From: Bispira polyomma
Taxonomy: Eukaryota
Direction of reading: 5' to 3'
DNA: 64,000 nt
NCBI GenBank assembly: GCA_965649765.1
Contig: OZ287749.1
Coordinates: forward strand, 87,544,001-87,608,000
Position 1 is the first letter of the stretch; the number at the start of each line of letters is the position of its first letter. The translations under genes and the position numbers were made by a program. The notes beneath the pieces are model-generated. The model did no database searches and was not told the DNA's origin. It saw only the letters and a program-made list of their open reading frames with translations. Positions 6,424 through 64,000 of this stretch are shown here, in pieces.

Positions 6424-6600
6424 NNNNNNNNNNNNNNNNNNNNNNNNNNNNNNNNNNNNNNNNNNNNNNNNNNNNNNNNNNNNNNNNNNNNNNNNNNNNN
6501 NNNNNNNNNNNNNNNNNNNNNNNNNNNNNNNNNNNNNNNNNNNNNNNNNNNNNNNNNNNNNNNNNNNNNNNNNNNNNNNNNNNNNNNNNNNNNNNNNNNN
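6424..6600. other. Assembly gap (177 N)
   Basis: Run of n in the sequence. Confidence 1.
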
Positions 6601-14949: not shown

Positions 14950-17900
14950 TACCTCCGAGTTATGGTTTAAAAACATCATACCTTTATCATAAACTACTGC
15001 TTGTCTTATCTTACTGTTATTTTGTCTGATTTTATGGTGTCTTTTCAGTATTCCTCACCTAGTTGTTTAACTTTCTGCCATTATTGCTCACATTCCCCGT
15101 TTTACGCATCCGTTTATCTGCGAATTTCGCATTTCCCTTTCCGCTTTGTGACTTTTTCTCACATATTTTTGGTACTACAACTGTTTTTTTACATACAATA
15201 TTTTTACAACTTATTTTCAACTTATTTCTCACATATTTTCGGGATATCTGCTTTCTGATACTGTCTGGCTGTGATTTGTTACTTTCTACTTATTTTTGTT
15301 ACTTTTTCCTTATTCTTGTTACTGTTCCTTGACTTCTGAGATGTGGAAGTTATGTTTCACACTTCTCCCTAGCATGGTTCTGGCCGGTGTCAGATTACAT
15401 AAGCGAAGCGCCAGCTCGCCCTCAAATACCCAATTTTTCAACCAATTTGCACTTGGTCCATCTCTCCTAGCCTCCCTGGATAAGGTGAACACTTTTTTTT
15501 AGCCTTTTAAATTCACATTACCCGCCATCCTAACCCCCGGGTTAATAGTGTTTAGATCCCTCTGCTGACTGCACTCTGCGAGGAGGTCAGCGTAAATTCA
15601 GGCCCCCCAGCATAAATGCTCAAGATTGGTGCATTTAATGCCCGTTCCTTGCGAAATAAGGCACCTGCGGCTATCGACTTAGTCATAGCCCAGGACCTGG
15701 ATATCGCTGTCCTCTCCAAGATGTGGCTCAGCAGTAGAGATACAACATCTTTTTTTAATGATATAACTTCTCCGGGTTATAAATTTGTTCAGTCTCCTAG
15801 GTTGTACAAACGGGTAGCAGGAGTAGGCATCTTTGTGAAAAATGCTTTTTCTTGTGAAATTAAAAAAATTCAGTCCTACTTTTCCTTTGAATCCATCTCA
15901 TGTGAAATTTCCAATGGTTGTCACTTATTCCTGGTGTCCTCGCTTTACCGACCACCCACTCCTTCTCTAGCTACCTTTTCTCAAGAGTTTTCCGAATTCC
16001 TTGAAACCCTAAACCTTCTCCCATTTGAAGCTGTCATCCTTGGTGATTTTAACATCAAGGTAGACATAAAAAATACTGCAACAAAAGATTTCTACAACCT
16101 CCTTAACACTTTTGGGTTCTCACAGTTCATCTCCACTTCAACCCACATCCACAATCACATACTCGATCTGGTAATCGCAAGACCAAATTCAAATCTCATC
16201 AGAGAATCACGGGTAACTGATTGGATTTCGGATCACCTAGCAACCTTGCCTATTTAAATTTACCAATACCTGCCTTACACAAAACTCGTTTAATAAAATA
16301 CAGAAACATCAGAAAAATCAATATGAACAAATTTAGAGACGACATCCTAGAATCAAATCTCATCAGACATCCATGCAAAAATGCTAAAAGCCTTAGCTTA
16401 CAATACAAGCACTGCCTTTCTACCATCCTGGATAAACACGCGTCTTGGGTATCTAAAACCCTTTCCCCCAACAAACCCCCATGAATGGACCAACACCGCC
16501 ATTACAGAGGCAAAAAGATGCAAACGCCAACTTTAGTGTCAATGGCGTCATACTAAATCCTCTTTTGACAGAAGCTGTTACAGTATCGCCACAAATAATT
16601 ACAATAGACTAATATCTGATGCCAAAAAGCAACATTACAACTCTATCATCAGTGAAAATCAGGATAATCCCAAAAGGTTATGAGCCTCCATAAACAAAAT
16701 TCCACATCGAACATCGGAGAAAGTTCTTCCCATAAACCACTGCCTTACTTTCTCAGCCGAAAAATTTGGAAAATTTTTCATAGAAAAATCAGCAACATTC
16801 GTGACGGCTTTCCAACGATGTATCACTTCAGTCCTCCAACCCCAGGATATAAGGTTTCTAACCTGTTTCATTTCAGTACACTGTCAGAGCAGGAAGTTCT
16901 GGAACTCATAAAATCTTCTACGATTAAATCTTGTGAATTAGATCCTATCCTGGCAGTTATTCTAAATCAATGTCTTGACATTCTAGTCACACCCATAACA
17001 AACATTTTAAATTTTTCTCTTCGGGATGATGTTTTTCGCACCTGTTTCAAGGCAGCAAATGTAACTCCCTTGATTAAAAAACAAGGGCTTGAGAAAAACC
17101 AGCTCAAAAACTACAGACCGGTGTCAAACCTCAGCTTCGTCTCAAAAGTCATCGAGAAAGTTGTTGCTAAACAAATTTCTGACCACCTTAATAGACAAAA
17201 CATTGAAAATCGCCACCAATCTGCTTACAGAAAATTCCACTCTTCAGAAAGTGCCCTTTTTTCCATCAGCAATGATATCAATCTTGCACTGGACTGCAAC
17301 AACACAGTGGCCCTCACCCTTCTTGATCTCTCAGCTGCATTCGACACTATTGATCATGTCCTGCTCAGTGACACTCTAAAGCAGTGGTTTGATATAAATG
17401 GCAGTGTCCTTAAAGGGATCAGATCCTACCTTACTCTTAGCTCACAAGGAATTAATTTAGATGATCACCTATCATCTTCCATAAAGCTACCATATGGAGT
17501 ACCCCAGGGATCAGTCCTTGGCGCTCTACTTTTCCCCCTTTATACACATCCTCTTAGCACTGTCATAAATAAACATAATATAAAACACCACATGTATGCA
17601 GATGATACTCACGTCTATTTCTCTCTCAGTCCACAAAATGCAAATATAAACATATACCTACTTGCAGACTGTCTCTCTGATGTCCAGGCGTGGATGAACT
17701 ATTCCAAACTAAAATTTAACCTGGACAAAACAGAATTCATCCTCATAGAAAACAAGAAAAACAGTGAACTCCTAAAATCTTTGTTTCCCATCTGCCTGCT
17801 GGAAAAAGACATACTACCTTCCGAAAATGCCAAAAACCTGGGTGTCACTTTTGATTCAGCTTTTTTGTTAGACATTCATATTGCCAACATCTGTCGCTCC

Positions 17901-18571
17901 TGCTATTACCATATAAGCGACATCAAAAGAATCAGAAACCACATGTTCATGGACACAGCGATAACTGTGGCAAATGCCCTTGTGAGTAGCCGCCTCGACT
18001 ACTGCAACTCTCTTTTTTACGGAGCAAACAAGTCACACATTACAACGCTCCAGTCCATCCAAAACTGCCTATGTAGGGTCATTTTTCGTCTGGGTTGTCA
18101 CACAGACGTTACTCCTTACCTCAAAAAATTGCACTGGCTGCCCATTCATTGTCGTATTTTGTTCAAGATTCACTCTACTACTTTTAAGGCTGTAGTCACT
18201 CAACAGCCCCCTACCTTGCCTCCCTTCTCTCCTTCAGCAACCGTAAGAAAGGCAACAGAGTCTCTGTCTCTTCGGTCAGACCAGTCAGGAAGACGGGATC
18301 CAGAGCGTTTTCCACTGCAGCTCCACTGTTATGGAACAGTCTTCCAATCAACCTCAGATCAGTTGACACACTTATCGGTTTTAGGAAAAAGCTGAAAACC
18401 TAGCTTTTTAACCTTGCCTACCCACCTTAGCTTCCCTTGTGCACGCTCCCACTTCCTTCCTTATGACTTTGCAATTTCCATGGACTTAATGATTAAACCA
18501 GTGATTCTGCTGTTCTGCTTTAGAAGATGTCTAGCATCAATAAAGTGTGTTAAAAATTTATAATAATAATA
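14950..18571 (+). mobile_element. Near full-length L2-clade LINE (APE endonuclease + RT), frameshifted
   Basis: Endonuclease 15616-16257 (FNARSL, YRPP, GDFN, ILDLV, SDH). RT 16680-18395 (NYRPVSNL, LLDLSAAFDTIDH, GVPQGSVLG, YADD, SRLDYCNS, LHWLPI). Ends AYPP, 3' UTR and (TAA)n at ~18560. Several stops and frameshifts. Confidence 0.93.
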
Positions 18572-40400: not shown

Positions 40401-41957
40401 GCTTCTGGGAGCCACACATATGTAGTTGTCGATGTATCCGAATGTCTGGAAATGCTGTTTCATCATGTGTGACGTAATGGTGTCTGTGCAGTGCTGAAAC
40501 GCTGCACTGCCATGAGCCCACCCGAACGCAATTGCCGGATCAATGTATCAAAGTTAGACAGCATGGACCAGGTCGACTCTCAGGTTACACAAGCCCGCGA
40601 AACGTCAATTTTGAATAAGACTTCGTTCTCAGTTTCTCTTACTGCTAGTTTAATGTTATCAATTGTTGGAAATTTAAGAGTAAAGGCTACGTTATCGAAT
40701 TTTCCTTTGTTGACATTATCATTGAGTGAAGCTCCATATGGCTGAGAAAGATTTTAAAATTACCCGATGTTTTGTTATATCCTTGGGCCTAGTTAACAGT
40801 GGAGATCAATTGTAATGAGTGTTGTTAATATCTTGGCTTAGGCCCAACATTGCCCCAAGCGACATTTCTTTTTGTAAATAGTCATTTACTGCCTTAGGAT
40901 GTTGTAAAGGTGAAAAGTGTTTTTTTACTCTAGCAATCCTAACCTTATTCGGTTCACTTAGTGATAAGGGGAAGTCAAATGCAATGTACTGAATCAGTAA
41001 CTCGTCAGAATAGCCCTTAAGTAACTTTGCCTAGCTTCAATCGCCAACCCAGAACTTATTGGTATTCTGGCCTGACAATAATTGGGAACACCTGTGTCCC
41101 TAATAATGTCTGCCATTTCCAAAATTTTTGAAACAGAGTCGATTCTTATAGGTAATCTGTCAGGACCCTCAAAGTAAAACTTTGTGGGTGAAAGTGCTAT
41201 AAATCCGATTTCCTAATTTTTGTCATTAAAGTCCCTAGCTTGCCTGATGACAGGATTGCTAGTATGGTCAGTGTGAATCATTTCAGTAAAGTTTTCAGAA
41301 GACCCTGACTGTAGCATATGTGCTGTCTGCCTTCATGTCGCTGACATTATTGAAAACATTTTTTTTATTATCACAATCTTCAATTAAGGAATCAATATTT
41401 CCCTCAACAGTAAAATCTTTACCATTGCTTTTAACACATTGCATATCTCTCTTGTAAAAGTAGAATGAGTTATTAGCTTGTTTCATTTCCTCTACTGATA
41501 ATGTATCCCTTAGTACATTGGCTATCATTAGCCTATAATCAGCTAAGAAAATTTCAAAATTTCCTACAACATATAGCATACCACTTGGTGAGAAATCAAT
41601 AGGGCTATACACAAAGTTACCAGTATTTGGATCCCATCCTTGGGAGAAGAAACCCTGCATGAGACCCTTATTGTCTCTGATGAAGACTGTTGGTAATGCC
41701 CCCATGCCATAAGGCAATATATATTGCCAATTTGTTACTTCTACCTTTACTTTTTGATTATCTTCCCCAACGCTGGTCATAATGAGTTCATTCTTTATTG
41801 AATTCATGCTATTGTGACCTCCTGCATGCTTGACCTTTTCTCCCTGCATTACCTCAGGATCTTGTCTGACACAGCCCTGTCCATTTTGGTGAATGGATAT
41901 CAGCCCCACTGTCTCACCAGTTTCTGAAATGTCACTATTTACATCATTGACATGCAT
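37497..41957 (-). mobile_element. Ngaro-like (DIRS order) tyrosine-recombinase retrotransposon, degenerate, gag apparently missing
   Basis: RT ~41100-40250 (SPLLTRPK..RVIL.LSQPYGASLND, LKFPTID, FKIDVSRA, YIDN). RNase H 40225-39640 (LHLDACLTGFGG). Tyrosine recombinase 39480-38703 (FLGFLRLSN, TFRRSGA, HGLWRS). A ~109-bp direct repeat at 38586-38694 and 37497-37605 follows the recombinase. Confidence 0.9.
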
Positions 41958-44599: not shown

Positions 44600-45120
44600 A
44601 TCATTAACAACAGGCCATGGGGATACAGGAGCGGGCTACGGGTGCGGGAGCAACAAAGGCAGGTGCCCCCATGCCATAGGAGGTACTCCGCTGCGGTTGA
44701 AATTGTGGATACTGTTTTGGTTGTTGCTGGAAAAGCGTGAATCCTACCTCCTCTTGAGCCTGTTCCTATAAGTTGCTGACCAGGTTGAAGGCCTCCTCTC
44801 TAAAGGTGTTGAACAAAGGTTCCAACAGTTTATCAGTCTCTAAGGACAGCCAGCTCATTAAGACGGCGCTTGGTCCCTCAGGCTTTGGTTTGATGGCATC
44901 CTTCAGGAAGCCGGCTATCCTAGCTTCGATCCCGGACATACTGTCCTTAAAGTCGGCTGACAATGCATCATGGTGGGTTGGAGTGGACTGCCCTCCATAG
45001 GCAGATGACTCTTGGGAAAGTCTGGCTGGTGACAACAACAATAAGGACTCCGCCATCTCCAGTTCAGCTTGGTCTATGTCGGACTGGGATCCCCTTGATG
45101 TCTGCGACCTGTCTGCCCCA
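44600..45120 (-). mobile_element. Probable C-terminal remnant of a Harbinger accessory (Myb/MADF-type) gene
   Basis: ORF 44766-45056 (..LMSWLSLETDKLLEPLFNTFREEAFNLV) plus a Gln/Pro-rich tail resembles the fragment facing the Harbinger transposase. The DNA-binding domain itself is not seen. Confidence 0.35.
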
Positions 45121-45569
45121 CTGTTTGTTTCTTGCTTTAATCATTCAGTATTATCTAAGCACCCAAATATCTTCACGTGTACATGTGGTCGTGATGATTT
45201 TGAGTGATTTATTATTGAATTCAGAAAGTATTAATAATTTTAGTAAAAAAACATCAGGATAGCCTTGTGGCCAGGCTGTTCAGTACACATAAATTGGTGT
45301 GGAGTGAAGTAGTCTTGGTGGGAGAACAAAACACTGATAACATTTGTATACTGGCCTGACTTGTCTGCCTAAGATATTGTGTGTATATTTTTTATTGCAA
45401 CCCAGTTTTTTTGCCCTTTATTTCATTTAAATCCAAAAACTGTGTACTCTACATAGCATAGCATCTACATAGCATCTACAGTGCTTGTAGGTAGAGATTC
45501 CTTTGGGCGCTAGTATATGTTTATCACTTGATAACAAGGCTCTCCAGTTTAACCAAATATGTATATTAA

Positions 45570-46812
45570 AATTTGGCATCTACAGAAAAACTACTTCCAT
45601 GTTTAAGAAAATATAAAGACCTATCCTCCAACTTGCTGAACCCTGTCAAATCCTGTGTCAGGCAAGTGACCATCAGTAAGGGACTTTATGGCAAGACGTT
45701 TACGGAAGACTTGGAGCCTTAACTACAAGGAAGTCTTGCAGATGGTATAATTGGACTATACAATGTTAATCCAGACATAGAGCATTGCATTTTTGAAACA
45801 AATGTTATATATTATTCAGCTTCTGGTTTAGCTGCTGGACGTGACAGGTGGATAGTTAAAAAGGATGAAAGTACAGGTGCCATTGTGTTTGTACACAGTA
45901 ATGGGGAAGCAATACTAAATACAACATTAACAAAGAAGTTAAAATCCAGTTCACAATTTAGAGATCCAAATGGCCTGTTTTTTTAATATTTTTAAACTAC
46001 TGCTGGGAAAAAACTACACAGATAGATATATGTCCAATAGAATATTACAAAGATGGTAGATCCATTAAATATAATCAAGTGATTGTATCTGTGAAGGATA
46101 ATGTGAGTCATGTGGATTTTGTTGCAGCAGGAAAATTTCAAGAGTGGCCCAGATACATTCTTTGGCTACAAACTAAAGGGAAATGGCCAAGCAAATTATG
46201 CAGCAAGATATTTCATTTGAACGTAGTTGTAGGAATAACAGGTTGACGCTGCTTGTTTGCAGATGTTGAAACTGAATTGTTTTTATGGATAAGCACCTTT
46301 TAGAAGCATGCATATGTCCTCTTTAAAAGCATGTTCTATCGCTGTTTCAGACCAATCTCATGTGCCAAATATGGCGGTGAGAATGATGCTTTCTTCACTT
46401 CATATTTGGCCAAGACAACCTTCTTGTTTGAGGTACACCCACCAAAAGATGGAGTTTGGCAATGTGTAGATTCAGCAGTTTAGTTACTTCTGCAAGCTCT
46501 CTTAAAGTATTTTGAGCAAGCAGATCTGCTTCATTTTGCACTGAACCATAACCTTTTTGGAAAAGGCACAGCCATAACTACTTGCAATGCAACATTATGC
46601 AATCAGCTGTGAAGCAATCGTCAGAAATGGTAGATAACTTTAAACAGTACCTCCCACAGGAGAATCATTTCAACCGACTGATCAAAATGATCTCCCTAGC
46701 ACATAGAAGAATTGACTGTCTGATTAAACTTCTAACCAATATACAGTATATGTACTATACTGTAAAACGGAGCCACAAAAAGGGGCTTACGAAGGTTTTA
46801 TGTAATATTTAA
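45570..46812 (+). pseudogene. Mab-21/cGAS-like receptor (cGLR)-family nucleotidyltransferase pseudogene
   Basis: Manual translation through stops: LQGSLADGIIGLYNVNPDIEH ... HVDFVAAGKFQEWPRYILWLQTKGKWPS ... G*RCLFADVETELF..F*KHAYVLFKSMFY ... FTSYLAKTTFLFEVHPPKDGVW..LLLQALLKYFEQADLLHF..NHNLF. Stops at 45720, 46244, 46301 and 46481; frameshifts near 45985-46005 (with adjacent TAA codons) and 46580. Confidence 0.85.
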
Positions 46813-47387
46813 CTTTCTCACAACAGCTAACTTGTTGTTGGCACTGGAAACAAAAAATGGACTGATTCTCACTTGATAACTTTGTAATAACTCTTTGTGG
46901 TCATGAAAACAGTCTATAGAATTGGCAATAGTGAAATAAGAACCAAACTTCAAAAAGTAAAAGTGATTAAAGATTCACTTTTTCTAACAATCTTTTCAAG
47001 AACTTTGTAATTCTCAGCATTATCATATATTTGTACATAAGGCTATTTTAATTCAATCCTCTTCTGCAAACGTTTGTTATTTGTATAAATTACTATTAAA
47101 TGAATATACATGTATTAGTAACATATTATTCCACTGTTACATGTAAGTCATTAATCATTCTATATGTATTAAGTTTATATATCCATTTAATCTCGTATAT
47201 ATCTTAGAAGTAAGGTTAAGTTACAAAGTGACCTACTGTTACAGTAATGTTACCTGTCAATACAAATTGCAATATGAGCAAATACTGAACTTGATATATT
47301 TATTTAAATAATTGGTATTGTTTTGTTGTCACCCAAAAAATTATTTGGTATATATGATTTAGAAGTGGTATGATGCTAATACAATTA

Positions 47388-47561
47388 CAGTGGAGCCGTC
47401 TTAAGTCGAATCTAAAGGGACCATAAACATTTATTCTACTTATCAGAAATTATACTTAACAGGGTAAATTTTAATTAGAAACGCAACAATGGGACCTCAA
47501 AATAACTTCTACTTGACAGGTAATTGCACTTATCAGAGTTTCACTTACAGGGGTATGACTG
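47388..47561. mobile_element. Tc1/mariner (pogo/Tigger-like) MITE
   Basis: TA|CAGTGG ... TGACTG|TA with imperfect inverted ends. Confidence 0.6.
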
Positions 47562-58859: not shown

Positions 58860-61800
58860 TGTGTGCTTGCTTAATTTTATTTGTAAATTAATATTGACAA
58901 CAAATCGTATTTACAATCCTTTACAAGGCGGGCGTCTACTGCTCCTGTAAGTTTAATTCTTCTTGGTGTACCACTAAATATTTAATGCTGCATTTAATTT
59001 AGCAGTACACGGGTGGTGCTGACACCTAGGTTATTATTTAAATTATTATATAAAGGTTAAAGACAGTTATAAATATCCTTTAAAAAATTTATATGTGAAC
59101 ATGTACTCTAGTTACAAAGTACTCACTAGATGGGGACCTCTTGTGAAAGTTTGACATTAAATATTGTGGTGAAACCAGGGTTTGGCTTTTAGTACGAACC
59201 CCAACCGCAGAGCGTCGAAGTGATATAAAAGGTCAAGGGCAGTCTGAAATCGTGGTAGTTCAAACCAAAAGGAGCGCCATATTGGAAAAGCCTTATATTC
59301 TTAGCCTTTGCTGTTGGAAACCAACAGTCGAGGCATTCTACAAATACAAGAGACTACACAGTTAGTTGACTGTGTATATAACAGTGATTAGAGCCAGCTC
59401 TGTGAAGTGTTAACAACACAAGCTTCAGGGCTGGAGCAATAACATATTAGCGCCCAGTTTAGTACACAAAAGTTTACTTTATTGGTATAAGAAGTGTGTG
59501 AAGACTCACATTTCTGTTTTCTAGTACTAGTGAAGATATTTGTAGTAATTTATACACTGTTTTTGCTTGAAAATTCACGCTAATTTCAAGTGTATAATTA
59601 GCGAAAAAACGGCTATTTCGAGTGTGTTTTTGCAGAAAATTACACCAAAAACTGCTGATTTTTGTATCTAAAAGTATTGTAAATGTAATTATATCACTTT
59701 CTTGCAAGAAATTTGATTAGTGAAGGTGATTTATAGCAGTTTTGTGGCAAAATATACAATTTAACAGTGTGTAAACTTGCCATATTGCATTGTGATTACT
59801 GTGTGCACTGTGTTTGAAATAATTCAAGATAATTCATAATGGGTCAGTGCCGATTGAATTATATTGATATTGGGTACTGAATTATTGCTGAAATTTTGAT
59901 GTATATTCTATGGAATTTCGGCTGGTGAATTGTTTGTCTTGAGTTAATCAGTGTAGTATTGATAAACTTGGTGCACCCAGTTGTCGATATATTTGACACA
60001 TTTAATGTGAAATTTGGCAATACTGGTGAATCGAATTATTTCAGTTATTCATCGGTAATTTGAATTAATAACTGGTCGTAGGTTATTGGTTCTTGTTGAA
60101 ATTTTTTGGTGGTGTATATTTATGCCATTGAAATATATTTGAAATCATTTATAAATATAAACTTGTAGTTTCACCATATTTTGGTTGACTACGGTGCAGA
60201 TAAAATAGAGAACCAGTAATCGAAAACGGTTTTCGCCAGATTTTTTATAAATTTGGTGGAGATTAATAGTCAGTTACTATATATATATATATATATATTG
60301 ATATTATACAGTGCAACAAATTTGAATTATAATTTGTTAAATCTGTCGACAGCAGTAACACTTGAATTTAATTACTGTATCGATAGAAGTGACAGTTAAA
60401 TAAATCACTGTGTTGTCAGCAGTGACTATTGAAAATTAAACTGTCGATAAATCACTGTATTGTTTGAATTATACTAATAGAAGTACAGAATTTTGTAAAT
60501 TAGTAGGTTTTCGCCATATTTTTGGTTCAGTGGAAATTGGTGGAAATAGTGTTATATATTTTGTAACTGATAAATTGATATTGAAGTAAATTAATTACAA
60601 GCTAGAATATTTTTACTGAACGCTTAATTCAGGTAAATTTTTATTGAAATTAGAAATTTATTATATTTCATTAGAACTCAGATAAATTTTATAGCTGTAT
60701 TGATAATATACCAGTATAATTTTGATAAATTATTTGTTGTTTTGAAATATAATATATGCCATACCAACTTAGTTAATATCAGTTAAGAACAGAAAGTTAG
60801 TGTTTCCATTAGTTAATGCTTCTTTTAGTTAATGGTGGCATACAATATTGCATATATTAAAATTAATTTGAAATAATTAAAAAGAATTGGAAATTTATTT
60901 ATAATTTAGAATTTAAATCTAAAATTGAAATATTTATAATTTGGGAAAAGAAACATAAATTTCAAAAATAATTTCAAAATTGAATAATAATTGTTAATCA
61001 GAGAGTGTGACTGCTTTTGATTAACATAGTTGGTTGCAAAAGGGATATTATCTGATATCCATATAGGAGATTTTAAAAACGATAAAAAAAAATTTTTTAA
61101 ATAGAAAGTAACGCTAGTGAATCAGGGAGTTTACTCTTTTGATTATTGTCAGTTACTTTACATTGCAAATACTTGACACTATCCTTTAGTTGTTAAATTT
61201 GCATGAAACTTAAAGATCATTAAAAAAATAGTTAACAATTTCTAGTAACTGATTTTGCATGAAATTTTGAAATCATTAAAAATTCTAGTATAATTTGACA
61301 GGGTAGAAGACAGATGCATGTGCACTATTCCAATTAGAATAAGTGTTAAAATGTAACTAGTTATTAAATTATTTATAGTGAATTACAAATCCCTATTATT
61401 GACTGGAACTGTTATATTTACACTTTTGGAAAAACAAAAATGTCAAACGATTTTGCGATATCAAAATGTAGGAATTGCATATTTCAATAGTAGAATGCCA
61501 ACCAAATTAATAAATATTGAAAGCGCTGATGAGCAGGTATTGTCGGAGATTAAATATCTCGGAGAAAAAAGGGTTAAAGAAATATTAACTAAACGCAATG
61601 AATTAGGTGGAAGGATGACCGAAACTGATTTCGATCAGGTCGGCTTGCCAGAACATAGCGTCCGTTCAGCTATAGAATGTATTCAATTTACCGAACAATT
61701 TGAGGGAGCCAGTTTTCCGAAGACACAGTTAGGTACTCCAGAAAATCTACTTTATGAACAAGTGGATAGTTTCTCGTCTGTGCAGGATTCTATGTTTACT

Positions 61801-64000
61801 ACAGGAAATTCTGATGATGAAGAAATAAAACCATTAAAGGGTGTTTCTGCAAAATCTGTTAGTGATACATCGCCGAAGTTATCACTTCGCGGGAAAGATG
61901 TTACAGAACATAAACCAGTTACTGAAGAAAGAGTAAAATACTTGGTTGAGGAATCGCATGACAAATTGCTTCACACAATTGAGTATGGATTTGCTCAAAT
62001 GGAGGAAATAAAGTCAGATGTCTGCCAGCAGAGTGAAAGCCTGGGAAAAGAAATTAGCACCATCAAGTCTGAGGTATCCACCATCAAGCGAGATGTTGAA
62101 GAAGTTTCAGATAATGTATGTAAAGTGCGGGGTGATATTCAAGGTCACATCCAAGAACATATCCAGGAGCTTACCCGTCATTCCGAAGTGACTAAAGCTG
62201 ACGTTGCGGCAAACATCACTAACATCACCAGGATTGATAGCGTGCAGAAAACTCTTAGTGACTGTTCAAGCTCTAACGGAGGATGTTCAAGCTTTGAAGG
62301 TCAAAGAGACTGATCTACAATCATTGGTGATGACTGAAGTTGATCCAGAATTTCTTGAGGTCCGAAAATGGCTAGATGCTTCAGTACAGGAGGTGTCTGA
62401 ATTGAATACAGAGAAATACCTTTTTATGGAAAAGTACCTTCAAGAGGAAGAAGAACAGAGGAAGAAAATAAAGGACATGAAAGGACTTTGTCCAGGGTTG
62501 ATGGCCAAAGCTGAGACCATTAAAAAACAGAATGTTGCCTTCCAAGAAGACTTTTACAGGAGTAAGATGGAAGTAGTTGGAAATAAAATAAAGGATGATG
62601 TGAACACCTTAAAATACAAATTTGGCGTGGACAATCCTCTATCTTCTGACTGTAAACAGGATCTGGAATGGACTGGACTGGATCTACTTAAAGCAGAAGC
62701 GTCGACTAAACCAGACCCGGCTCACTCACCAGTAGCTGTATTGGACACAGATACCTACTGCAAAGAGCCAACATCGTCAAAACCATACAAGGCTGGTCTT
62801 GTGCAGTTTACTTCAAATCCTGGGCATAAAAGATCGTCCACTCCAATGAGTCTTGTAGCATTGAGTAGATTGAGAAAGGTTATAGATGAAAAGACTGTTA
62901 ATGGAAAATATGTGGGTCGTAAAGTAAAATCTAGGAAGTACCACAAGCAAATATCTCAAACTCACTCGAAACAGAAGACTCCGGACTCAAAATGTCAATC
63001 AACAGAGGTTCAAGAGGGAGATTCTGATGATTGCGATAGCGATGCTGCAGAAAAGTCTGCACAACCAGATGACGTTTCACATAGTAGTGAATCTGATGAA
63101 CAGGAGACTGTGAGTCATACCTCACGTGTAATCAAGAGTGGTACTCTCCAGATACCCAAGATGACATTCGATGGTACCTACTGGCGTGGGTTTATTAGTC
63201 AATTTGAAGCCTATGCAAGGAGAGTGAGACGGTCTCAAGGAGACAAGATTGACGCCTTTGGCATGTGTCTCAGAAAGGAGGCTTCTAAGTACTTCAGTAT
63301 ACTACCAGACAAAGAAAAGAAGAGCTTCAAGTGGATGAAAGCTAAATTTGAGCAGTACTTTGAGAAGAATGATTCTCCATCCACCATCAGATGGGAAATC
63401 TTGTCAACTGAACAGAGGGAGGACAAGTCACTAGAGAAGTATTTGGCCCGTTTACAGAAACTGATTCTTAGTGCATATCCAGAGGCAGGGCAGATAGAAC
63501 TCAATAACTCTCTCTTTGTGGAAGCTTTCCTGAAGGATTGTCGTGATAAGGCAGCTGCAATAGCCACAGGTGTGAAACAACCTAGAAGAAGCTTACAAGC
63601 ACATAAAAACAGAGCAGCAGGTGAAGAAAGCCATACTTGGTAAGAAGGGTTCAAGTGCTGTTAGGCAGGTAAAGCAAATGCAGTACAGCTCCGACAGCTC
63701 AGAGTCAAGTTCAGTTGGGGAACCATCAGTAAGGAACTTTTCGGCTCATAAGAAATTCAGTGAAAAGCCGAAACCCAAGTTTACAACTGAGTCAACCTCC
63801 GTGTCAGGGACAGACCTTAAGGACTTAGCCAAAACAATGTCGCAGTTACTCGAAGTCATGTCCAAACAGACCCCTCAAAAGAGTAATCAGTAATCGCCAA
63901 GCATGAATAACGGGTGCTACGAATGTGGGGATCTGGGATTGTCCTAGGAGAAGAAGGTATTCATCCCCTGGTAGTCCCAGATCTGGTTATAACTCAAGGG
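58860..64000 (+). mobile_element. Gypsy/Ty3-like LTR retrotransposon, 5' part (LTR remnant, putative PBS, long leader, disrupted gag)
   Basis: Candidate LTR end TTGACA at 59156. TTGTGGTGAAACCAGGG (59164-59180) matches the tRNA-Phe PBS TGGTGCCGAAACCCGGG at 13/17 positions. Gag lies downstream; pol would be beyond the window. Confidence 0.75.
61495..63950 (+). pseudogene. Retrotransposon Gag (HhH domain - coiled coil - acidic linker - capsid-like - zinc knuckle), frameshifted
   Basis: ATG at 61495. Capsid-like region FDGTYWRGFISQFE..CLRKEASKYF..QREDKSLEKYLARLQKL..AYP..FVEAFLK. Partial CCHC knuckle CYECGDLG..DCP near 63916. Frameshifts near 62255 and 63585; stop at 63891. Confidence 0.85.

What the first reader, a model, noticed from the sequence alone, without database searches (positions are those of the whole stretch)
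45570..46812. Fossil cGAS-like receptor (Mab-21 nucleotidyltransferase) invisible in the ORF track
Seen by translating through stops: G-S-x13-D-I-E (QGSLADGIIGLYNVNPDIE), a third acidic residue in HVDFV, WP..W..WPS, (W)RCLFADVETELF, YVLFK, TSYLAKT and LLHF..NHNLF, in the order expected for a Mab-21 domain, on one intronless stretch. Three stops are single-base changes (TGG>TGA, and probably CAG>TAG twice), so the ancestral protein can be rebuilt with its metal-binding triad intact. Established: cGLRs are innate immune sensors that make cyclic dinucleotides and are expanded in some invertebrates such as bivalves and cnidarians. Inference: a lost member of a possibly undescribed cGLR subfamily with living paralogs elsewhere.
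Basis: partly seen in the sequence, partly recalled or inferred. Interest (0 to 1): 0.75.

Follow-up and report, generated by a model that had tools for sequence, protein, structure and literature searches.

The report
Dead copy of cGAS-like receptor gene
This is a long-dead, heavily broken duplicate of a small family of cGAS-like immune-sensor genes whose intact copies sit elsewhere in the same invertebrate-type genome, an ordinary product of the gain-and-loss turnover of such genes.

Summary
The locus (about 45123-47327, coding remnant 45573-46873) is a full-length pseudogene of a ten-copy, single-exon gene family in this genome. Five copies have clean 451-456-aa frames; a sixth is open but has a doubtful start.

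The intact paralogs pass Pfam Mab-21_C (34 bits against a cut-off of 24.1). They align to Mab-21/cGLR proteins at 99.8% hhalign probability. Their model matches cGAS, MB21D2 and coral cGLR1 (Foldseek E about 1e-11). The cGLR reading therefore holds.

Three details do not hold:
- The window copy matches no Pfam Mab-21 model itself.
- It has far more than three stops: a lost start codon, four stops, six frameshifts, six in-frame indels, and dN/dS 0.94.
- The TGA came from GGA, not TGG.

The homologous pair is E-x-D in FETDV, and the window alone has Asn in place of that Asp, so the triad is not intact.

No repair is needed to study the family, because living paralogs exist. The pseudogene is ordinary. 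The subfamily is mildly unusual: it has no PF03281 match and non-standard motif spacing.

The parts
45123..45572 (+). Upstream flank that is still homologous to the closest paralog (L012). It is a presumed 5' UTR or promoter remnant.
   Evidence: The blastn alignment with L012 begins at window 45123 and is continuous into the coding part.
45573..45575 (+). Former start codon, now TTG.
   Evidence: The window reads TTG. L012, L014, L015, L016, L017, L018 and L019 read ATG at the aligned position. An exact contig covers 45422-45780 in runs X1, X2 and X3.
45570..45719 (+). Piece 1, covering the N-terminal long helix (family residues 1-48).
   Evidence: Family profile E 1.2e-13, profile positions 1-48.
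45720..45722 (+). Premature TAA, created by a 3-base deletion.
   Evidence: DNA alignment of ten copies. Exact contigs in X1, X2 and X3.
45723..45983 (+). Piece 2, holding the QGS motif (45726-45734) and the beta-2 strand with the catalytic pair position.
   Evidence: Family profile E 1.1e-33, profile positions 53-133.
45795..45803 (+). Remnant of the catalytic pair: GAA ACA AAT, reading E-T-N. The Asp is replaced by Asn.
   Evidence: Eight of the nine other copies show GAT or GAC at the aligned codon. The ninth (L020) is gapped in the DNA alignment but reads EVD in its protein. hhalign pairs this Asp with the nearly invariant Asp of Mab-21 proteins.
45818..45829 (+). Private 12-base in-frame insertion.
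   Evidence: Absent from all nine other copies. Exact contig covering 45770-45887 in X1 and X3.
45985..46008 (+). Two +1 insertions, at 45985 and 46008. Both are frameshifts in short T and A runs.
   Evidence: Exact contig covering 45864-46137 in X1.
45962..46243 (+). Piece 3. It holds the strand with the third Asp (GAT at 46115-46117) and the WP...WPS segment. Internally it carries a 15-base deletion after 46101, a 1-base deletion after 46191 and an 11-base deletion after 46211.
   Evidence: Family profile E 1.5e-28, profile positions 132-229. Lesions.
46244..46246 (+). Premature TGA, derived from GGA (Gly).
   Evidence: All nine other copies read GGA here.
46247..46300 (+). Piece 4 (RCLFADVETELF...).
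   Evidence: Family profile E 0.011, profile positions 231-248.
46301..46303 (+). Premature TAG, derived from CAG.
   Evidence: Eight of the nine other copies read CAG and L013 reads CGC.
46304..46480 (+). Piece 5, the core of the Mab-21 C-terminal domain (YVLFKSMFY...TSYLAKTTF). It has in-frame deletions of 3 bases after 46382 and 6 bases after 46428.
   Evidence: A profile of 34 proteins from outside the family matches it at E 1.7e-8. The family profile matches at 5.9e-28.
46481..46483 (+). Premature TAG, derived from CAG.
   Evidence: All nine other copies read CAG. Exact contigs from 46399 onward in X1, X2 and X3.
46484..46609 (+). Piece 6 (LLLQALLKYFEQ..LHFALNHNLF). It is homologous only up to the 4-base deletion after 46559.
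   Evidence: Family profile E 6.8e-9, profile positions 313-339. The deletion is seen.
46552..46809 (+). Piece 7, C-terminal helices. It ends at the +1 insertion at 46808.
   Evidence: Family profile E 3e-34, profile positions 340-422. The insertion is seen.
46766..46873 (+). Piece 8, the last C-terminal remnant in a third frame. It has a 3-base deletion after 46839.
   Evidence: Colinear weak match, family profile positions 412-441, E 0.29. DNA alignment.
46874..47327 (+). Downstream flank still homologous to L012, a presumed 3' UTR remnant. A very high-copy repeat begins about 47378.
   Evidence: The blastn alignment with L012 runs to about 47327. Summed contig depth jumps to between 5794 and 30522 in the 47378-47450 bin.

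Best explanation
Window 45123-47327 holds a non-functional, neutrally decaying duplicate of a lineage-restricted family of single-exon genes. These encode proteins of about 452 aa with the cGAS/Mab-21 two-lobed nucleotidyltransferase fold, so the family is cGAS-like receptors (cGLRs).

Shown:
- The family has ten full-length copies. Five form a same-strand array on contig C5 at 30.95-31.11 Mb and the others are dispersed.
- Five copies keep clean open frames. A sixth (L020) is open but lacks the family start and has an N-terminal deletion.
- The intact copies keep QGS, E-x-D and a third Asp.
- The window copy branches with the C5:30.946 Mb copy (L012).
- All of its lesions are private to it.

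Inferred:
- The intact paralogs are ligand-activated enzymes that make a nucleotide second messenger read by the genome's STING gene.
- The window copy landed on contig C2 by duplication or retroposition of a unit of about 2.2 kb. It has evolved without constraint for essentially the whole time since, so it does nothing now.
For: Paralogs. The DNA search of the own genome gave 12 matches: the locus itself, nine full-length copies at 78-85% identity, and two fragments. Open frames of 451-456 aa were found in L012, L014, L015, L017, L018 and L020.

Family identity.
- Pfam Mab-21_C scored 34.3, 31.9 and 33.2 bits (cut-off 24.1) in 3 of 3 paralogs tested.
- The profile search found 1327 proteins at E<=1e-3. 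Of the 43 rows aligned, 40 carry Mab-21_C and 29 carry PF03281.
- hhalign of the family against 29 outside proteins gave probability 99.84%, E 1.7e-30, over 323 columns.
- The AF2 model has pLDDT 74.3 and pTM 0.80.
- The top Foldseek hits are cGAS 8g2p (E 1.8e-11), MB21D2 7lt1 and Sp-cGLR1 8gjy, with 274 hits at E<=1e-3.
- The profile against PDB sequences gave Sp-cGLR1 at 2.7e-25, MB21D2 at 3e-23 and cGAS at about 5e-12.
- 28 of 30 Atlas hits are Mab-21 clusters.

Death of the window copy.
- It has a TTG start, 4 stops, 6 frameshifts, 6 in-frame indels and Asp>Asn.
- dN/dS against L012 is 0.94, compared with 0.44-0.57 for most intact pairs.
- Its private substitutions fall 25/22/12 by codon position.
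- Its branch length is 0.137, against 0.045 for L012.
- Exact contigs from two samples reproduce most lesions.

A STING ligand-binding-domain locus is present in the genome.
Against: - The window copy matches no Pfam model. Six pieces gave 0 Mab-21 hits at E<=10. It is absent from the 28 PF03281 matches and the 64 PF20266 matches of the own-genome scans, although the other nine copies are all found by PF20266.
- Even the intact paralogs miss the NTase-core model PF03281.
- The family-only profile reaches cGAS in the PDB only at E 0.14.
- The gap between the catalytic pair and the third Asp is 98-102 residues in 8 of 9 family proteins, outside the X50-90 of the published cGLR criterion.
- No enzymatic activity and no expression was tested. 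No RNA run holds the locus.
- Exact contigs were not listed for 46138-46398, so five lesions there rest on the assembly alone.
Confidence: 0.9

Rival explanations
1. The copy is a processed retrocopy that was dead on arrival, rather than a DNA-level duplicate that worked for a time and then decayed. This rival concerns origin only; both end as the same pseudogene.
For: - The copy is dispersed to another contig (C2), whereas its nearest relatives are on C5.
- The homologous unit is only about 2.2 kb, that is the coding part plus UTR-sized flanks.
- dN/dS against the nearest paralog is 0.94, and private substitutions show no third-position excess (25/22/12). No detectable period of constraint followed the split.
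Against: - No poly(A) tract and no target-site duplication is recognisable at the ends. No terminal repeats were found.
- The parent genes are single-exon in their coding part, so intron loss cannot be scored.
- About 450 bases upstream of the start are included, which could be promoter rather than UTR.
Confidence: 0.4
2. The family is Mab-21-fold but not a signalling enzyme. It would be a non-catalytic Mab-21-like protein, like Mab21L1/2 or TMEM102, so the window holds a dead copy of a non-cGLR gene.
For: - There is no PF03281 match.
- The motif spacing lies outside the published range.
- The middle residue of the pair is often not hydrophobic (T, G, S).
- Calculated pI is 6.7-8.8 across the nine family proteins and 6.7-8.6 in this genome's six, below the >8.5 reported for nucleic-acid-sensing cGLRs in five of those six (passage of PMC9980059).
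- One Atlas row is a TMEM102 cluster, with score 0.90.
Against: - QGS, E76, D78 and D183 are kept in 9 of 9 family proteins at only 50-76% overall identity.
- The best sequence matches among solved structures are active cGLRs (Sp-cGLR1) and cGAS.
- A STING locus is present.
Confidence: 0.15
3. The locus is a live gene. On this view the apparent lesions are assembly errors, or are bypassed by recoding or splicing.
For: Contig evidence is missing for 46138-46398. At 46808 two contigs per run lack the extra base.
Against: - About 17 independent lesions are spread over 1.3 kb.
- Exact contigs from two samples reproduce the TTG start, TAA 45720, both +1 insertions, the 15-base deletion, TAG 46481, the 4-base deletion and the +1 at 46808.
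- The contigs that differ are 90-95% alike and carry paralog states, for example the ATG after 46382.
- dN/dS is 0.94.
Confidence: 0.02
4. The family is cargo of a transposon or an integrated virus, and the window copy is a dead element rather than a host gene duplicate.
For: - The copies are dispersed on four contigs.
- The neighbourhood is rich in mobile elements. A LINE endonuclease and RT lie at 15616-18395. A high-copy repeat starts at about 47378. An ORF with a weak integrase SAM-like hit lies beside L012 (E 0.0093, below cut-off).
Against: - Homology between copies stops within about 450 bases on either side of the coding part.
- No terminal inverted or direct repeats bound the unit.
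- No transposase, integrase or RT is shared among the copies.
- Five copies form a same-strand array with 30-45 kb spacing, as tandem host-gene duplicates do.
Confidence: 0.03

Closest known systems
Animal cGAS-like receptors (cGLRs), e.g. Stylophora pistillata cGLR1 (PDB 8gjy) and the expanded cGLR repertoires of bivalves and cnidarians (Li et al. 2023, PMC9980059; passages read)
   Same: - Two-lobed Mab-21 fold: the intact paralog's model hits 8gjy at Foldseek E 2.3e-10, and the profile hits it at E 2.7e-25.
- The QGS, E-x-D and third-Asp residues are kept.
- The genes belong to a genome with many Mab-21_C matches, 57 over the cut-off, and with a STING gene.
- Copies are gained and lost.
   Different: - About 15% identity to solved cGLRs.
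- No match to the Pfam NTase-core model PF03281.
- 98-102 residues lie between the catalytic pair and the third Asp, against X50-90 in the published criterion.
- The window copy itself is dead and has Asn at the second acidic position.
Human cGAS (e.g. PDB 8g2p, 7fui)
   Same: It is the best Foldseek match of the intact paralog's model: E 1.8e-11, probability 1.00, TM 0.46-0.65, with 384-446 aligned columns out of 452 residues. It shares the C-terminal helix bundle.
   Different: Identity is 13-16%. No zinc-ribbon insertion or DNA-binding surface was tested. Calculated pI is only 6.7-8.8. Ligand and product are unknown.
Human MB21D2 (PDB 7lt1), a cGLR of unknown ligand
   Same: Second-best Foldseek hit (E 3.3e-11) and second-best profile hit (E 3e-23). 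It is an orphan member with the same fold.
   Different: Identity is 16%. MB21D2 is a single conserved vertebrate gene, not a fast-turnover multi-copy family.
Ankyrin-fused cGLR clusters noted earlier in this same genome (scan notes s1-632732 and s1-632751)
   Same: They belong to the same superfamily and show the same birth-and-death pattern, with most copies broken and a few intact.
   Different: This family has no ankyrin repeats, is single-exon and about 452 aa long, and lies on other contigs. I did not examine those loci myself.

Membership tests
cGLR (criteria of Li et al. 2023, PMC9980059), applied to the intact paralogs | Active-site motif h[QT]GS [X8-20] [DE]h[DE]h [X50-90] h[DE]h | tested here: inconclusive
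   All 9 family proteins have QGS, X20, E-x-D-h and h-D-h. However, the middle residue of the pair is T, G, S, V, L or C. The second spacer is 98-102 residues in 8 of 9 proteins (84 in P0003), outside X50-90. The residues are met and the spacing is not.
cGLR (criteria of Li et al. 2023), applied to the intact paralogs | [quoted passage not shown] | tested here: met
   hhalign of the family against 29 outside Mab-21 proteins gave probability 99.84% and E 1.7e-30, covering family residues 42-386. Pfam Mab-21_C is over its cut-off. PF03281 itself is not matched.
cGLR (criteria of Li et al. 2023), applied to the intact paralogs | Predicted structural homology to known cGLR/CD-NTase enzymes | tested here: met
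   The AF2 model has pLDDT 74.3 and pTM 0.80. Foldseek finds cGAS, MB21D2 and Sp-cGLR1 at E 1.8e-11 to 2.3e-10, probability 1.00.
cGLR, applied to the intact paralogs | Ligand-dependent synthesis of a nucleotide second messenger | not testable with these tools
   This needs purified protein and nucleotide product assays.
cGLR, applied to the window copy itself | Complete catalytic triad in an open frame | tested here: not met
   The copy has no ATG, 4 stops and 6 frameshifts. The second acidic residue is Asn (AAT at 45801-45803), whereas the other copies have Asp. Five residues are deleted just before the third Asp.
Pfam Mab-21 NTase domain (PF03281) | Score over the gathering cut-off (24.1 bits) | tested here: not met
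   There was no hit at E<=10 for the 6 window pieces or for 3 of 3 intact paralogs. None of the 28 own-genome matches lies in the window or at a family copy.
Pfam Mab-21_C (PF20266) | Score over the gathering cut-off (24.1 bits) | tested here: met
   Met by the paralogs at 31.8-37.7 bits, at 9 of the 9 other family copies. Not met by the window copy, either in pieces or read through stops.
Pseudogene | Disabling lesions relative to intact relatives, plus loss of selective constraint | tested here: met
   About 17 private lesions. dN/dS is 0.94, against 0.44-0.57 for most intact pairs. Private substitutions fall 25/22/12 by codon position. The branch is three times as long as L012's.

The most novel reading that the evidence does not exclude
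The intact paralogs, together with three 49-55% identical proteins from one other unnamed assembly, may form a narrowly distributed cGLR subfamily that standard screens miss. They have no Pfam NTase-core hit and an insert of about 100 residues between the catalytic pair and the third Asp, outside the spacing rule of the published catalogue. If the subfamily is uncatalogued and active, it could sense a different ligand or make a different nucleotide signal. The window pseudogene would then be one record of its turnover.
Probability: 0.3. Interest if true: 0.5.

Novelty: new member of a known kind. Interest (0 to 1): 0.3.

Why it matters
The pseudogene adds one more case to the known birth-and-death turnover of cGAS-like receptors in invertebrate genomes with expanded repertoires.

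Two practical points follow. First, nothing needs to be rebuilt, because five paralogs with clean open frames (and a sixth open frame with a doubtful start) and a conserved triad are available for direct assay.

The subfamily is worth a look by people cataloguing cGLRs. It escapes the Pfam NTase model and the published spacing rule while keeping the catalytic residues.

Tried and rejected
- **Pfam on the stop-free pieces of the locus.** None of the 6 pieces gave a Mab-21 hit. The only hits were two chance-level ones on the last piece, DASH_Duo1 at E 0.085 and DUF745 at E 0.28.
- **Own-genome scans that read through stops.** PF03281 gave 28 matches and PF20266 gave 64 matches. Neither finds the window copy.
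- **Family-only profile against PDB sequences.** Only cGAS came up, at E 0.14-0.34, which is not significant by itself.
- **First structure prediction.** With a 10-row alignment the model was unusable, at pLDDT 45.2. It was repeated with 43 rows.
- **Word-indexed protein search.** It returned only 4 relatives, none with a name. The exact-sequence look-up found none of 4 paralogs in the collection and gave no names. The family's taxon and any public annotation therefore stay unknown to me.
- **Retrocopy or transposon hallmarks.** No poly(A) tract, no target-site duplication, no terminal repeats. The mode of dispersal is unresolved.
- **Expression.** No RNA run holds the stretch, so expression is untested.
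- **Intact alleles.** Only contigs from 3 runs, 2 samples and 1 study were available, and one of these may be the assembly's own source. No contig shows an intact state at a stop. The differing contigs are 90-95% alike and carry paralog states. Exact contigs for 46138-46398 were not among the rows listed.
- **Literature.** One search led to PMC9980059, of which I read 12 passages. For all other papers I saw only the listing. One search gave nothing on cGLR pseudogenes or on this subfamily. Table S1 of PMC9980059, the list of 3,020 cGLRs, is a supplement I could not open. It may already hold this subfamily.
Its Glu position varies E/T/D/Q among intact paralogs. Both MAFFT and hhalign place the conserved E-x-D seven residues later, on the predicted beta strand 73-82.
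Full report
**Setting.** The window is G000:C2:87544001-87608000 of a 1.035-Gb assembly in 75 contigs. It has 35% G+C, CpG observed/expected of 0.46, and one masked N run at 6424-6600, which I left alone. This composition, together with LINE endonuclease and reverse-transcriptase ORFs at 15616-18395, fits an animal genome. I did not determine the species.

**The observation.** However, they lie in three frames. The path through them is:
- 45570-45719
- TAA
- 45723-45983
- two +1 frameshifts
- 45962-46243
- TGA
- 46247-46300
- TAG
- 46304-46480
- TAG
- 46484 to about 46559
- a 4-base deletion
- 46552-46809
- a +1 insertion
- 46766-46873

**Direct family tests on the locus fail.**
- Six pieces searched separately against Pfam at E<=10 gave no Mab-21 hit. 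One 18-residue piece was too short for the tool.
- Own-genome scans that read through stops found 28 PF03281 matches and 64 PF20266 matches, none in the window.

The picture changes once relatives are brought in.

**Paralogs.**
- The 1243 bases match nine other full-length places in the genome at 78-85% identity, plus two fragments.
- Five full-length copies and one fragment lie on the same strand of C5 between 30.946 and 31.115 Mb. The other copies are at C5:67.79, C1:90.10, C1:93.84 and C4:78.72 Mb.
- L012, L014, L015, L017 and L018 have clean ATG-to-stop frames of 451-456 aa. L020 has a 454-aa frame with an odd start. L013, L016 and L019 are broken.
- The intact proteins are 73-76% identical to L012.

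**What the family is.**
- All 3 intact paralogs tested pass Pfam Mab-21_C (34.3, 31.9 and 33.2 bits; cut-off 24.1), and none matches PF03281.
- The word-indexed search of 5.8 billion proteins found only four relatives. Three are 49-55% identical. One is 26% identical and carries both Mab-21 domains.
- An exhaustive profile search found 1327 proteins at E<=1e-3, 318 at E<=1e-10 and 41 at E<=1e-30.
- I aligned 34 of the more nearly full-length hits with the nine family proteins. Of these 43 rows, 40 match Mab-21_C and 29 match PF03281.
- A separate profile-profile comparison of the six paralogs against 29 outside proteins gave probability 99.84%, E 1.7e-30, with 323 aligned columns over family residues 42-386.
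- With the 43-row alignment, AlphaFold2 gave pLDDT 74.3 and pTM 0.80. A first model from 10 rows was useless at 45.2.
- Foldseek against the PDB returned cGAS (8g2p, E 1.8e-11), MB21D2 (7lt1, 3.3e-11), further cGAS entries, and Sp-cGLR1 (8gjy, 2.3e-10). There were 274 matches at E<=1e-3.
- By sequence, the 43-row profile hits Sp-cGLR1 at 2.7e-25, MB21D2 at 3e-23 and cGAS at about 5e-12. The six-row family profile alone reaches cGAS only at E 0.14.
- The protein-language-model atlas places the paralog among Mab-21 clusters in 28 of 30 hits, commonest in Cnidaria and Mollusca.

The window's own sequence also connects directly. A local profile built only from the 34 outside proteins matches piece 46304-46480 at E 1.7e-8 among 2849 pieces of the whole window. 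The family profile matches eight colinear pieces that cover profile positions 1-441. The Mab-21/cGLR assignment therefore holds.

**Catalytic residues.** The published cGLR criterion is h[QT]GS [X8-20] [DE]h[DE]h [X50-90] h[DE]h (passage of PMC9980059).
- In the family, QGS is at residues 53-55.
- The acidic pair that aligns with the conserved E-x-D of the outside proteins is E76-x-D78, in the sequence FETDV. Both MAFFT and hhalign agree on this. It lies on the predicted strand 73-82.
- The third Asp is D183 in (N/H)VDF.
- All nine family proteins keep these residues.
Its Glu position reads E, T, D or Q in intact paralogs, so it is not the metal-binding pair.
- Spacing is X20 after the Ser. 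It is then 98-102 residues to the third motif in 8 of 9 proteins (84 in P0003), outside X50-90.
- In the window, the D78 codon reads AAT (Asn) at 45801-45803. Eight of the nine other copies show GAT or GAC. The ninth is gapped in the DNA alignment but has Asp in its protein.
- A private 15-base deletion removes five residues of the strand leading to the third Asp.

The triad is therefore not intact in the window copy.

**Lesions.** All of the following were found against the nine other copies and are private to the window:
- ATG>TTG at 45573.
- A 3-base deletion that makes TAA at 45720.
- Asp>Asn at 45801.
- A 12-base insertion at 45818-45829.
- +1 at 45985 and +1 at 46008.
- A 15-base deletion after 46101.
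- A 1-base deletion after 46191 and an 11-base deletion after 46211.
- GGA>TGA at 46244.
- CAG>TAG at 46301.
- A 3-base deletion after 46382 and a 6-base deletion after 46428.
- CAG>TAG at 46481.
- A 4-base deletion after 46559.
- +1 at 46808.
- A 3-base deletion after 46839.

**Constraint and age.**
- Nei-Gojobori dN/dS is 0.94 between the window and L012. It is 0.44-0.57 for most intact pairs, 0.85 for the very young pair L014/L015 and 0.74 for L012/L020.
- Private substitutions by codon position are 25/22/12 for the window, so there is no third-position excess.
- In a FastTree tree, the window groups with L012 and L013 (support 1.00). The order within the trio is unresolved (0.17). The window's branch is 0.137, against 0.045 for L012.
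- I infer that the copy has been unconstrained for essentially all the time since it split from the L012 lineage. Converting this to years would need a mutation rate that I do not have.

**Origin.**
- Homology with L012 runs from 45123 to about 47327, roughly 450 bases either side of the coding part.
- There is no poly(A) tract, target-site duplication or terminal repeat.
- Contig depth jumps to thousands at 47378-47450, so a high-copy repeat follows the unit.
- Whether the copy arose by retroposition or by DNA duplication remains open.

**Reads.**
- Three runs from one study (two samples) hold the stretch. All are kept as contigs, and none is recorded as RNA. One of them may be the source of the assembly.
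- Contigs identical to the window cover 45000-45367, 45422-45780, 45770-45887, 45864-46137 and 46399-47432 in X1. In X3, the second sample, they cover 45422-45780, 45770-45887, 46399-46867 and 46838-47430.
- These reproduce the TTG start, TAA, Asn codon, 12-base insertion, TAG 46481, the 4-base deletion and the +1 at 46808 in both samples. In X1 they also reproduce the two +1 insertions and the 15-base deletion.
- No identical contig was listed for 46138-46398, so the 1-base and 11-base deletions, the TGA, the TAG at 46301 and the 3-base deletion rest on the assembly alone.
- Contigs that differ (for example one with ATG after 46382, and two per run without the extra base at 46808) are short, are 90-95% alike, and carry the paralog states. 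I read them as paralog contigs, not intact alleles. Contigs cannot exclude rare alleles.

**Context.**
- The genome has at least 57 Mab-21_C matches over the cut-off, many with stops. It also has one STING ligand-binding-domain locus on C1.
- Earlier notes of this scan describe decaying ankyrin-cGLR clusters elsewhere in the same genome. They concern a different subfamily, and I did not re-examine them.

**Verdict.** It is much more decayed than stated, its catalytic triad is not intact, and it is invisible to the Pfam Mab-21 models. As a pseudogene it is an ordinary product of immune-gene turnover. The mildly unusual part is the subfamily itself: few relatives in public protein sets, no NTase-core Pfam match, and non-standard motif spacing. 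Whether published catalogues already include it could not be checked, because supplements are closed.

Noticed in passing
G000:C7:2427618-3349071: Seven Mab-21_C matches with identical scores (E 4.3e-9, 46 bits, 184-aa open frames) lie about 72 kb apart, on both strands of C7 between 2.43 and 3.35 Mb. An eighth, slightly different, is at 2.53 Mb. This looks like a very recent large-unit array or a palindromic duplication carrying a short Mab-21_C gene or fragment.
   Followed up: no
window 47378-47450: Summed contig depth jumps from about 14-31 to between 5794 and 30522 in all three runs, with many loose ends. A very high-copy repeat starts about 50 bases after the end of the pseudogene unit.
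   Followed up: no
window 15616-18395 (+): Two ORFs of a non-LTR retrotransposon: an endonuclease (Exo_endo_phos_2, E 2.6e-10) and a reverse transcriptase (RVT_1, E 6.5e-30).
   Followed up: partly
L012:55-843 (+), i.e. beside the closest intact paralog on C5: A 262-aa ORF with a weak, below-cut-off match to the phage-integrase N-terminal SAM-like domain (E 0.0093, 16.8 bits). It may be a remnant of a tyrosine-recombinase element next to the gene.
   Followed up: partly
L020 (C5:30.99 Mb copy): This otherwise open copy lacks the family's usual MAST start. It begins at an upstream Met with an unrelated N-terminus, and it has deletions in the beta-2 region. It may be starting to decay despite its 454-aa frame.
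   Followed up: no
window 61378-63643 (+): Two long overlapping ORFs of 311 and 479 aa. The second gave no Pfam match. An earlier scan note (s1-686220) reads this region as a Gypsy-type Gag.
   Followed up: no
window 41295-41957 (-): A 220-aa ORF about 3.2 kb upstream of the pseudogene unit, with no credible Pfam match. The only hit is MatP_C at E 0.0096, below cut-off.
   Followed up: partly
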